From: Salpingoeca rosetta
Lineage: Eukaryota > Protista > Choanoflagellata
Length of the DNA: 64,000 nucleotides
NCBI GenBank assembly: GCA_033442325.1
Contig: JAWQFM010000005.1
Coordinates: 2,211,772-2,275,771 of the forward strand
Direction of reading: 5' to 3'
A program made the translations under genes and the position numbers. The notes beneath the pieces are model-generated. The model searched no databases and was not told where the DNA came from. It saw only the letters and a program-made list of their open reading frames with translations. Positions 53,500 to 55,907 of the stretch are shown here, piece after piece (position 1 is the first letter of the stretch; each line of letters begins with the position of its first letter).

Positions 53500-53952
53500 G
53501 GCGGAGAGGGTACACACACATAGGGTCAGACTAGGGATTGGTGTGTGTGTGTGTGAGAGAGTGTGTGTGTGTGTGTGTGTCAGTGAGAGAGAGAGAGAGT
53601 GTGTGTGTGTGTGTGCGTGCGTACTGCGTGATAGCGAGTGCTGCTTTGCTGCTTCTCTCCCATTGTTAGTTGTTTGTGGTTGTCCTTTATTGGGGGCACT
53701 CAATACACATCTTTTAACGGACCCTTTCGCTTCACAGCGCATGCCAACGCACCAGCCAATTCTTGCTTCATATTCACATCAAAGCCAATGCAATGCGGTC
53801 GAGCAAGGGAACACAGGCTCACACAGCCAAGGAGACAGGCACACACACACAGACACACAGAGAGACACACACACACATACACCAACTCACACATACACCA
53901 ACTCACATGCACCAACTCACGCACACATACACCAACTCACACATGCACCAAC

Positions 53953-55507
53953 TCACACGGTGCTGGATGAGATGCTGTATGTGCGCCCAGCGCTGCCATC
54001 GTTCCGAACGGCAATGTTCGCTGCGTGCGAGGGCGCGTTGCTGTGTGTCGGGTGGCGGCTCGGGCTGTTCGATTCCGCGAGGGCAGCGGCCAGCGCCTGC
54101 GTCTTGACATGGTCAACCTCTGCATAGTCAGTCTTGTCGGTGGTCTCTGTCGCCATGGTGAGGGGGCGGGCGTAGTCTCCCGATGCGCCATCATCACGCG
54201 TGTGCTTCAGCGTTAAGTATTGGACCTGGGGTACAGGCCCTTGGGTGGATTGCAGCGTGTCTGATTGACTTTGCTGTCTATCGTGGCTGGGATACTGGCC
54301 CTGATGGAGGATAGCATCTTCCCGGCATCCGCCCGACCGTGAGCGCATGTGTGAAGGTGAATGCATCGTTGACTGGCTCCCGTCATCTGTTACTGTCGCT
54401 GCCGAAGGCGCCGAGCGCGCGTTGCTGTGCCGGCTGTGGTGGCTGGCGTCACTTGCGCCACTTGCACTTGCTATTGACTTTGCGTGCCGTGCATGCGCCA
54501 CATCGCGGTGGTTGTGGCTTCGCGCAGCAGTGGTGTGGCTGGCATCCTCGGAGCTGTCATCTCTGCTGCGGGCATCAATGGTGTTGTTGGTGTTGCTGTG
54601 GGTGTTGCTGTCGGTGTTATCGCTGGCATTGCTAGTGTCTGTTTGTGTAGCACCCTGGAGGCGGTTGGTGGAATACGTATCGGTTGAGTCCCACTCCATG
54701 GCAAAGAGCTCCTCGGCGTGTCGTTGCTTCTCTGCACGCGCTTGCTCTTCAGCCCTCGATGCCTTGCGGATGATGCGGACTGCATACATGACGGCAACAA
54801 CACACGCGATTGCCCCGAGCGCAAGCAGGACACTCCCTGCCATTGGTGAAGCACAGGAGGCCGAGACATGATTGAGGTGCAGAGTGAGCGACAGTTGGGT
54901 GAGCGAGGGAAGGTGCTTGGCGCTGCTGCGCTGGCACAGCAACAAGGGCGCAGAGAGGAAGGGCTTGCGTGGAAGCACAGCAAACTGCACCACTCCCTGA
55001 CACATGCATACACGCATGCACACACACACATGCACACACATGCACACACATGCGCACACATGCGCGCGCGCGCACACACACACACACACACGCACACACG
55101 CACATACACACACACATATGCACACCTGTGATGAGCCACACATCTGGCCCGCCGTTTCCGGTGCTGTCTGAGTTGCCATTGCTGGTGTTGTTGGTGCCAT
55201 CCTCATTGGACCCCGTATGATTTGATGTGCCTGAGGATCCACAGTACGTCTCGTTGGCCAGGCACCTTCCAGCAAGGCAGCCGCTCAGGCAGGCGTCAGA
55301 CACACACGCGCGTGTGCAGTTGGTGGTGTCTGGGGAGACGACGGCGCTTGTGCACGCGACCAGGCACGTGTTCAGCGCAGAGTCTGTGAGCCCTTCATCC
55401 CGGCACTTTGTCGCGCAAGTTGCGCCCACTGCCGCCGGCGCCACAGCCAAGGCCACCAACACAGCCAAGATCACGCCTGTTGGCGATGCCATCGCACCCT
55501 TCCTCAT
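53953..55507 (-). CDS. Orphan type I membrane protein: signal peptide, small Cys-rich ectodomain, TM helix, disordered tail with tandem tyrosine motifs and C-terminal PDZ-binding STV
   Basis: Two exons, 55507-55126 and 54836-53953; the phase-1 GT-AG intron 55125-54837 keeps frame. Signal MASPTGVILAVLVALAVAPAAVGA; 11-Cys ectodomain; N-glycosylation-rich stalk; TM VWLITGSVLLALGAIACVVAVMYAV followed by RIIRK; tail motifs VQYLTL, DYARPL, TDYAEVDHVKTQAL and ...SSSTV*. Confidence 0.82.
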
Positions 55508-55907
55508 CGCTCAAGCTTGCCTGCAGGCATCCGCCTTGCTTGTGCTGTATGTGTGGGTGGTGGTGGATGGAGGTGAAGGGGTTTGTTTGTTGTTGTGCTT
55601 TGCTGTGTTGCTGCATCATCAAACAAAACTGTGCCTGACAAACCAGATGCAGAAACGAGGCATCGTTGCCCGGTAACGAAGAATGTTGGTGGTCATTGCT
55701 GCAGTTGTTGTTGTTGTTGTTGTTGTGGTGGTGCTCAAGCACGCAGACACACAGACACACCCTCTCATCCTGCAGCCCATGCACCATCCCTGTTGCTTCT
55801 TGTTCCTTTCAATGAAAGTTCACAGCGTAAGCTCAACACACACACACACACACAGACAGACAAACAGACAGACACACAGACACAAAGGCGCGTGGCGTGC
55901 GCCATTG

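What the first reader, a model, noticed from the sequence alone, without database searches (positions are those of the whole stretch)
54090..54230. Membrane-anchored Gab1/DOS-type tandem-tyrosine (SHP2-activating) module on an orphan receptor
Seen: the minus-strand type I membrane protein (53953-55507) has the tail QVQYLTLKHTRDDGASGDYARPLTMATETTDKTDYAEVDHVKTQAL. VQYLTL (54208-54225) fits the ITIM consensus and TDYAEV (54115-54132) fits the ITSM consensus, with the two tyrosines 31 residues apart. Known (from recall): the Gab1 C-terminal SHP2-activating motif is QVEYLDL...VDYVVVDQQKTLAL (Y627/Y659, 32 apart), and DOS and FRS2 share a similar Y-x-x-(V/I)-D-x-x-(K/R)-T-x-A extension. The resemblance extends beyond the short ITIM into that extension. 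Inference: in animals this module sits on cytosolic PH/PTB adaptors, whereas here it is fused to a TM helix and small Cys-rich ectodomain. This could be a kinase-less receptor recruiting an SHP2-like phosphatase in a unicellular relative of animals, analogous to PD-1/SIRP-type receptors.
Basis: partly seen in the sequence, partly recalled or inferred. Interest (0 to 1): 0.85.

Follow-up and report, generated by a model that had tools for sequence, protein, structure and literature searches.

The report
Choanoflagellate membrane protein with Gab1-like SHP-docking tail
An orphan single-pass membrane protein of the choanoflagellate Salpingoeca rosetta has two tail tyrosines laid out like the site where human Gab1 binds and activates the phosphatase SHP2. 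That makes it a plausible but unproven docking receptor for the organism's own SHP2-like enzyme.

Summary
The window is Salpingoeca rosetta.

Its disordered tail holds VQYLTL (Y334) and TDYAEVDHVKTQAL (Y365), 31 residues apart. The human Gab1 C-terminus is printed in a paper (Y627 and Y659, 32 apart). Against it, 5 of 7 and 8 of 13 positions are identical. These include D(+4), T(+8) and L(+11), the residues a 2024 structure shows forming the helix that docks on the SHP2 C-SH2 domain.

An exact calculation gives 0.0005-0.002 chance pairs of this quality per 8-million-residue proteome. The second block alone is not significant (0.3-0.4 expected).

S. rosetta encodes a clear SHP2/Corkscrew orthologue (P0152) with both phosphotyrosine-binding arginines. 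Published surveys report that choanoflagellates lack Gab and FRS2.

Weaknesses:
- No homologue or paralogue was found, so there is no conservation evidence.
- The first site lacks the acidic +2/+4 and hydrophobic +5 residues that the human N-SH2 prefers.
- The complex prediction gave no verdict.

The protein is not a Gab family member: it has no PH domain and no proline motifs. My best reading, at about 50%, is a pre-metazoan ITIM/ITSM-type SHP-docking receptor with a Gab-type C-SH2 helix extension.

The parts
53953..55507 (-). Gene PTSG_02044 (coding part), 421 aa. Exon 1 is 55507-55126, the intron is 55125-54837 (GT..AG, 289 nt) and exon 2 is 54836-53953 including the stop.
   Evidence: Identical to database protein P0001. 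The splice rebuilds one continuous 25-residue hydrophobic segment.
55424..55507 (-). Predicted signal peptide, residues 1-28
   Evidence: Kyte-Doolittle windows above 1.6 at residues 3-17 plus 19. The cleavage position is inferred by eye.
55142..55423 (-). Small ectodomain, residues 29-122. It has ten Cys, mostly as CX3C pairs, and five N-glycosylation sequons, followed by a Ser/Asn/Gly-rich stalk.
   Evidence: The AF2 single-sequence model is helical but of low confidence. No Pfam match.
54778..55141 (-). Transmembrane helix, residues 123-147, split by the intron (55141-55126 and 54836-54778). Followed by RIIRK (positive inside).
   Evidence: Hydropathy. AF2 helix with pLDDT above 90.
54208..54228 (-). 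Site 1: Q-V-Q-Y334-L-T-L. It fits the ITIM consensus and aligns with Gab1 QVEY627LDL.
54163..54174 (-). Middle tyrosine Y349 in Y-A-R-P (a YxxP motif) inside the linker
54091..54132 (-). Site 2: T-D-Y365-A-E-V-D-H-V-K-T-Q-A-L. It fits the ITSM consensus and carries the Gab1 pY659-type extension, with D369 (+4), T373 (+8) and L376 (+11).
54073..54111 (-). Predicted helix, residues 370-382 (+5 to +17 after Y365). It corresponds to the Gab1 D663-A676 helix that docks on the C-SH2 domain.
   Evidence: AF2 single-sequence DSSP helix with low pLDDT. Gab1 helix described.
53956..53964 (-). C-terminal S-T-V, which resembles a class I PDZ-binding motif
   Evidence: Sequence. The motif class is from general knowledge and was not tested.

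Best explanation
PTSG_02044 is a kinase-less type I membrane protein of Salpingoeca rosetta. Its long disordered cytoplasmic tail carries a bidentate phosphotyrosine docking module.

Proposed mechanism:
1. One of the organism's many tyrosine kinases phosphorylates Y334 and Y365.
2. pY365 with its following helix (D369 cap, T373, L376) engages the C-SH2 domain of the S. rosetta SHP2/Corkscrew orthologue (P0152, encoded on another scaffold).
3. pY334 engages the N-SH2 domain.
4. This draws the phosphatase to the membrane and releases its autoinhibition, as bis-phosphorylated Gab1 does for human SHP2.

Shown: the gene model, the topology features, the motifs and their spacing, the residue-for-residue match to the structurally important Gab1 positions, the rarity of that combination, and the presence of a conserved SHP orthologue.

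Inferred: expression at the surface, phosphorylation, binding, and activation.
For: - The gene model matches a database protein, and the splice rebuilds a transmembrane helix.
- Identity to Gab1 is 5/7 and 8/13 in two blocks, with spacing 31 against 32.
- D(+4), T(+8) and L(+11) are the N-cap and contact residues of the Gab1 helix on the C-SH2 domain. Truncating that helix lowers affinity tenfold.
- The Y365 core, T(-2) D(-1) pY A(+1) x V(+3), fits the C-SH2 library consensus and the preference for an anionic -1 residue.
- AF2 predicts a helix at 370-382 in an otherwise disordered tail.
- Chance expectation for the pair is 0.0005-0.002 per proteome. In Monte Carlo runs, 1 of 120 random proteomes reached the score.
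- It is the only such motif in the genome.
- The SHP orthologue P0152 has SH2-SH2-PTP architecture. Both FLVR arginines are invariant, and the N-SH2 LKEKNG loop is visibly kept in its sequence.
- Gab/DOS, FRS2 and Dof are reported absent from choanoflagellates while Shp2 and Grb2 are present.
Against: - No homologue or paralogue was found anywhere, so there is no evolutionary conservation of the tyrosines.
- Generic sequence searches do not link the tail to Gab1.
- Site 1 has T at +2, K at +4 and H at +5. The human N-SH2 prefers acidic, acidic and hydrophobic there, and S. rosetta keeps the K-x-K loop that would face the +4 lysine.
- Block 2 alone is expected by chance 0.3-0.4 times per proteome.
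- The template was chosen after the fact from perhaps 10-20 known SHP2-binding motifs, which weakens the statistics by that factor.
- There is no direct RNA, protein or phosphorylation evidence.
Confidence: 0.5

Rival explanations
1. Chance resemblance. PTSG_02044 is a fast-evolving, lineage-specific membrane protein with a Ser/Ala/Thr/Asp-rich disordered tail. The two tyrosine motifs have no SH2-docking role.
For: - No homologue or paralogue is known.
- Block 2 alone occurs by chance in about a third of random proteomes and block 1 is trivial.
- The template was chosen after the fact.
- The N-SH2 site departs from the human optimum at +2, +4 and +5.
- The complex prediction gave no support either way.
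Against: - The joint two-block match at the right spacing is expected 0.0005-0.002 times per proteome.
- The identical residues are the ones with a known structural role.
- The context, the cytoplasmic tail of a single-pass membrane protein in an organism with a conserved SHP, is the context such motifs need.
Confidence: 0.3
2. A general transmembrane adaptor, analogous to PAG/Cbp or LAT. Its phosphotyrosines recruit other SH2 proteins of S. rosetta rather than, or as well as, SHP. Candidates are Csk, a Crk-like adaptor at Y349 (YARP), the SH2-PTP-SH2 phosphatase on scaffold C22, or a phosphatase-less tandem-SH2 protein.
For: - The genome holds at least 92 SH2 matches, including several tandem pairs outside the SHP gene and an SH2/PTP/SH2 locus.
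- Earlier scan notes s1-440532 and s1-433420 describe such proteins.
- A YxxP site sits between the two tyrosines.
- Short SH2 motifs are promiscuous.
Against: - The +4 to +11 extension matches a contact mode described only for the SHP2 C-SH2 domain.
- The -2/+1/+3 pattern is the SHP C-SH2 library motif.
- There are no YxN or YxxM sites.
Confidence: 0.15
3. Annotation artefact. The locus is not expressed as this spliced mRNA, so the membrane anchor and the tail are not on one protein.
For: With the intron retained, the exon 1 frame ends at 54749 without the tail.
Against: - The GT..AG splice rebuilds one uninterrupted hydrophobic helix from two halves.
- The public annotation has the same model.
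- Runs X4-X8, from two studies and guessed to be RNA, hold 52-82% of the sampled words of 53700-55700 but are absent from all 20 holders of the intron part 54837-54998.
Confidence: 0.05

Closest known systems
Human Gab1 C-terminal bis-phosphotyrosine activation motif (pY627/pY659) that binds and activates SHP2
   Same: - Two tyrosines 31-32 residues apart in a disordered region.
- First site Q-V-x-Y-L-x-L.
- Second site D-Y-x-x-V-D-x-x-K-T-x-A-L, with D(+4), T(+8) and L(+11) and a helix-prone stretch after it.
   Different: - Gab1 is a cytosolic PH-domain docking protein with Grb2-binding proline motifs and many other tyrosines. This protein has a signal peptide, a Cys-rich ectodomain and a transmembrane helix, with no PH domain and no PxxP.
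- Site 1 lacks the acidic +2/+4 and Leu +5 of Gab1.
- No detectable homology outside the two short blocks.
Animal ITIM/ITSM receptors that recruit SHP2 or SHP1 (PD-1, SIRP-alpha/SHPS-1, and from general knowledge PZR and PECAM-1)
   Same: A type I single-pass protein without enzymatic domains. An ITIM-consensus tyrosine is followed by an ITSM-consensus tyrosine. The Y365 core T-D-pY-A-E-V is close to the PD-1 ITSM T-E-pY-A-T-I.
   Different: - The ectodomain is not Ig-like.
- The spacing of 31 is longer than the 14-residue linker of PD-1.
- The helical extension after the second tyrosine is a Gab1 feature. The PD-1 entries in the tables read show none.
- The organism is unicellular.
Transmembrane adaptor proteins (PAG/Cbp, LAT), from general knowledge
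   Same: A short ectodomain, a single transmembrane helix and a long disordered tail with a few tyrosine docking sites. Possibly also a C-terminal PDZ-type motif, as in PAG.
   Different: Those adaptors are palmitoylated at a juxtamembrane CxxC and recruit Csk or Grb2/PLC-gamma. This tail has no YxN site, and the motifs fit SHP SH2 preferences better.

Membership tests
Gab/DOS docking proteins | N-terminal PH domain | tested here: not met
   Pfam scan of residues 1-126 and 129-421 found no family at E<=0.1. The N-terminus is a signal peptide plus a Cys-rich ectodomain.
Gab/DOS docking proteins | Proline-rich Grb2 SH3-binding sites and multiple YxxM/YxxP sites | tested here: not met
   No PxxP, no YxxM, no YxN and only one YxxP.
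Gab/DOS docking proteins | Detectable sequence homology to family members | tested here: not met
   Only the protein itself was found in the 5.8e9-protein search, both with exon 2 (residues 129-421) and with the tail region. Nothing in PDB sequences at E<=10.
Gab/DOS docking proteins | C-terminal pair of SHP2-binding tyrosines about 31-32 residues apart | tested here: met
   Y334 and Y365 are 31 apart. Identity to Gab1 is 5/7 and 8/13 around Y627 and Y659.
SHP2 C-SH2 bipartite ligand of the Gab1 pY659 type | Core [T/V/I/Y]-x-pY-[A/S/T/V]-x-[I/V/L] with an anionic -1 residue | tested here: met
   T363-D364-Y365-A366-E367-V368, compared with the consensus tables in PMC12878756.
SHP2 C-SH2 bipartite ligand of the Gab1 pY659 type | Asp at +4 as helix cap, Thr at +8 and Leu at +11 as contacts, and a helix from +4 to +17 | tested here: met
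   D369, T373 and L376 are present. AF2 predicts a helix at 370-382, but at low pLDDT.
SHP2 C-SH2 bipartite ligand of the Gab1 pY659 type | Physical binding to the C-SH2 domain | tested here: inconclusive
   The complex-prediction run on the tandem SH2 of P0152 with tail 322-392 scored 0.19, below the 0.34 mark, so there is no verdict. It needs an experiment.
High-affinity SHP2 N-SH2 ligand | Hydrophobic residues at -2, +1 and +3 | tested here: met
   V332, L335 and L337.
High-affinity SHP2 N-SH2 ligand | Acidic residues at +2 and +4 and a hydrophobic residue at +5 | tested here: not met
   T336, K338 and H339, compared with the consensus in PMC8007070.
ITIM/ITSM inhibitory-type receptors (a functional class, not a homology family) | Single-pass membrane protein with cytoplasmic [S/I/V/L]xYxx[I/L/V] and TxYxx[V/I] | tested here: met
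   One match to each consensus, both in the cytoplasmic tail after the transmembrane segment 123-147.
ITIM/ITSM inhibitory-type receptors (a functional class, not a homology family) | Tyrosine phosphorylation and recruitment of an SH2 phosphatase in cells | not testable with these tools
   No phosphoproteomic record was found.

The most novel reading that the evidence does not exclude
The SHP2-type phosphatase of the last common ancestor of choanoflagellates and animals was already switched on by a bidentate phosphotyrosine ligand that used the 'pTyr plus helix' contact with the C-SH2 domain. In choanoflagellates, which lack Gab and FRS2 adaptors, that ligand sits directly on a kinase-less surface receptor. 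The Gab-type activation motif would then either be older than the Gab family or have arisen twice under the constraint of a conserved C-SH2 surface.
Probability: 0.35. Interest if true: 0.75.

Novelty: new variant of a known kind. Interest (0 to 1): 0.55.

Why it matters
Choanoflagellates have large tyrosine-kinase, phosphatase and SH2 repertoires, but almost none of their wiring is known. Published surveys find an SHP2 orthologue and no Gab, FRS2 or Dof adaptors, so what recruits and activates that phosphatase is open.

This tail is a concrete, cheap-to-test candidate: one peptide, one recombinant tandem SH2 domain, and one CRISPR target in a genetically tractable species.

If it binds, the recently described bipartite C-SH2 recognition mode would predate animals. 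It would also give the first receptor-to-phosphatase link in a unicellular relative of animals. If it does not bind, it is a caution about reading short linear motifs in orphan disordered tails.

Tried and rejected
- **Read laying.** The database protein P0001 contains residues 127-128, whose codons touch 55126-55127. It was used as a handle for sub-range queries and once whole for an exact look-up.
- **Complex prediction.** Tandem SH2 of P0152 against tail 322-392 scored 0.19 and 0.17, under the 0.34 mark. This is no verdict and counts neither for nor against binding.
- **Tail-only searches.** PDB sequences gave nothing at E<=10. The ESM Atlas gave no usable hit by features, and its structure hits were meaningless for a disordered peptide. 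The 5.8e9-protein search restricted to residues 326-385 found only the protein itself.
- **Metagenome contigs.** The tail gave no relative. The ectodomain gave two loci that are one bacterial contig, matched in an antisense ORF of a WD40 gene, so the match is spurious.
- **Paralogue search in the own genome.** None found.
- **Literature.** No paper names PTSG_02044. The supplements of the S. rosetta p38 paper do not list it, and that paper holds no phosphoproteome. No paper in the library links ITIM motifs with choanoflagellates.
- **Ectodomain model.** Mean pLDDT was 52, too low for a fold search, which I therefore did not run.
- **Neighbouring genes.** Thiolase, NKAP-like, CLPTM1 and an ankyrin/GH20 gene give no functional hint.

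Full report
**What is there.** The window is from Salpingoeca rosetta. Translating exon 2 (53956-54834, minus strand) retrieves one database protein at 100% identity: the 421-aa 'hypothetical protein PTSG_02044'.
- Exon 1 is 55507-55126.
- The intron is 289 nt, GT..AG, at 55125-54837.
- Exon 2 is 54836-53953.

The splice joins two halves of one 25-residue hydrophobic segment (residues 123-147), followed by RIIRK. This is internal evidence for the splice. The N-terminus is hydrophobic like a signal peptide. The ectodomain (about 95 residues) has ten cysteines, mostly in CX3C pairs, and five N-glycosylation sequons. No Pfam family matches either half. A single-sequence AF2 model shows a confident transmembrane and juxtamembrane helix and then about 230 disordered residues rich in Ser, Ala, Thr, Asp and His.

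**The motifs.** The tail contains exactly one ITIM-consensus match (V332-Q-Y334-L-T-L337, 54225-54208) and one ITSM-consensus match (T363-D-Y365-A-E-V368, 54132-54115). It also has one YxxP site (Y349) between them. There are no YxN, YxxM or PxxP motifs. Y334 and Y365 are 31 residues apart. The coordinates and sequences in the finding are correct.

**Comparison with Gab1, from tool-derived sources.** The human Gab1 613-694 sequence is printed in PMC11524581.
- Around Y627 it reads Q-V-E-Y-L-D-L, against Q-V-Q-Y-L-T-L here (5/7 identical).
- Around Y659 it reads D-Y-V-V-V-D-Q-Q-K-T-L-A-L, against D-Y-A-E-V-D-H-V-K-T-Q-A-L here (8/13 identical).
- Gab1 spacing is 32.

The preprint 10.1101/2024.12.23.630100 reports that pY627 binds the SHP2 N-SH2 canonically, while pY659 binds the C-SH2 in two parts. 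Residues -6 to +3 are extended, and residues +4 to +17 (D663-A676) form a helix. D663 is the suggested N-cap. T667 (+8) and L670 (+11) replace the usual +5 hydrophobic contact. Removing the helix lowers affinity tenfold. In PTSG_02044 the same positions are D369, T373 and L376. AF2 places a helix at 370-382 (+5 to +17), although at low confidence.

The Y365 core also fits the published C-SH2 preferences: T/V/I/Y at -2, A/S/T/V at +1, I/V/L at +3 and an anionic -1. It is close to the PD-1 ITSM and to the TXNIP site listed there.

The Y334 site fits the N-SH2 preference only in part. It is hydrophobic at -2, +1 and +3, but has T, K and H where acidic +2, acidic +4 and hydrophobic +5 residues are preferred.

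**Is it more than chance?** I scored the two Gab1 blocks (10 and 19 residues, anchored on Tyr) with BLOSUM62. The tail scores 20 + 39 = 59. Exact convolution of the score distributions gives these expected chance counts per 8-million-residue proteome:

| Match | Expected by chance |
|---|---|
| Pair scoring 59 or more at spacing 25-40 | 0.0005 (tail composition) to 0.002 (generic composition) |
| Block 2 alone | 0.27-0.42 |
| Block 1 alone | 150-360 |

A Monte Carlo run reached 59 in 1 of 60 (generic composition) and 0 of 60 (tail composition) random proteomes. The combination is therefore unlikely by chance and either half alone is not. The template was picked after the fact from perhaps 10-20 known SHP2-binding motifs, so the honest figure is nearer 0.01-0.04.

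In the real genome, the back-translated motif Y-x-x-[VIM]-D-x-x-[KR]-T-x-A-L has this as its only hit free of in-frame stops. A looser version has five hits. Only two of these lie in open frames, and only this one has upstream tyrosines.

**The presumed partner.** Pfam searches of the genome place two SH2 matches directly upstream of a split PTP domain on scaffold C6, 484-488 kb. An exhaustive search with one of its exons, followed by a word-based search, identified the annotated product P0152, 'tyrosine-protein phosphatase corkscrew [Salpingoeca rosetta]', 536 aa.
- Its architecture is SH2-SH2-PTP.
- Its tandem SH2 region is 51-63% identical to most of the 32 aligned orthologues (range 39-79%), which include animal PTPN11 proteins.
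- Both FLVR arginines (R31, R137) are invariant in that alignment.
- The N-SH2 LKEKNG loop is visibly kept in its sequence.

PMC7260276 also states that Shp2 and Grb2 homologues exist in Salpingoeca and Monosiga, and that FRS2 and Dof do not. PMC2747914 found no bona fide Gab/DOS protein in Monosiga. The phosphatase is therefore present without its classical animal activators.

**What is missing.** No relative of PTSG_02044 was found:
- Not in the 5.8e9-protein collection, with exon 2 (residues 129-421) or with the tail region.
- Not in the own genome.
- Not in metagenome contigs, where the one apparent hit is a spurious antisense match on a bacterial contig.
- Not in PDB sequences or the ESM Atlas.

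Conservation of the tyrosines therefore cannot be assessed.

I sent no DNA of those places to search tools afterwards. The indirect evidence is that five runs from two studies, guessed to be RNA, hold 52-82% of the sampled words of 53700-55700. None of them is among the 20 holders of the intron segment 54837-54998, while DNA-like runs hold both. That pattern is what a spliced transcript would give, but it is not proof.

The complex prediction gave no verdict. No paper or supplement names the gene.

**Interpretation.** The best reading is a kinase-less surface protein whose tail, once doubly phosphorylated, docks the tandem SH2 domains of the S. rosetta SHP orthologue and opens the enzyme. The second site would use the Gab1-type pTyr-plus-helix contact. 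It works like an animal ITIM/ITSM receptor and, at the second tyrosine, like Gab1. It is not a member of the Gab/DOS family: the PH domain, proline motifs and detectable homology were all tested and not met.

The rivals are:
- A chance match in an orphan disordered tail.
- A general adaptor for other SH2 proteins. The genome has many, including an SH2-PTP-SH2 gene on C22 and other tandem SH2 proteins.
- A mis-annotated gene.

I put these at about 0.5, 0.3, 0.15 and 0.05, with the SHP-docking reading first and the three rivals following in the order listed.

**Novelty and interest.** Transmembrane proteins with tandem SHP-binding tyrosines are well known in animals, so the kind is known. What would be new is a pre-metazoan example, on a protein unrelated to any animal receptor, carrying the helix extension so far described for Gab1. 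No paper in the searchable library describes ITIM-type receptors in choanoflagellates. The evidence rests on one sequence without conservation or experiment. I therefore score interest at 0.55, not 0.85, and give a clear and inexpensive experimental path.

Noticed in passing
window 53956-53964 (minus strand): The protein ends in S-T-V, which fits the class I PDZ-binding consensus ([S/T]-x-[V/I/L] at the C-terminus, from general knowledge). The tail might also be anchored to a PDZ scaffold.
   Followed up: no
window 54177-54222 (residues 333-340 and 346-352): Single-sequence AF2 predicts a beta-hairpin covering Y334 and Y349, with pLDDT about 77-82, in an otherwise disordered tail. There is no explanation yet. 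It may be an artefact, or a pre-formed element around the first docking site.
   Followed up: no
L004 = G000:C22:969500-976500 (minus strand): This is a second phosphatase locus, with SH2 matches on both sides of a PTP domain (SH2 at 974.4-974.7 kb, PTP at 971.5-972.7 kb, SH2 at 970.8-971.1 kb). That architecture is not the SHP order. Earlier scan note s1-440532 also lists it.
   Followed up: partly
L003 = G000:C6:482500-490500 (plus strand): The SHP/Corkscrew orthologue gene is cut into at least 13 short exons. Its introns are largely (GT)n/(AC)n-type microsatellites, like the intron of PTSG_02044. This agrees with scan note s1-434499.
   Followed up: partly
window 55142-55423 (minus strand): The ectodomain has ten Cys, eight of them in four CX3C pairs (31/35, 48/52, 64/68, 73/77). 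AF2 predicts short helices at low confidence. It may be a disulfide-stapled helical hairpin module. No family match was found.
   Followed up: partly
window 54999-55127: The (GT)n/(GC)n microsatellite just after the intron donor tripped the reads tool's filter. I did not examine it further and sent none of its letters to search tools afterwards.
   Followed up: no
L006/L007 (metagenome contigs Ga0079223_10000373 and MTKW01009477.1): The apparent 50% match to ectodomain residues 63-96 lies in a short ORF antisense to a bacterial WD40-repeat gene. It is a false positive of the pattern scan.
   Followed up: yes
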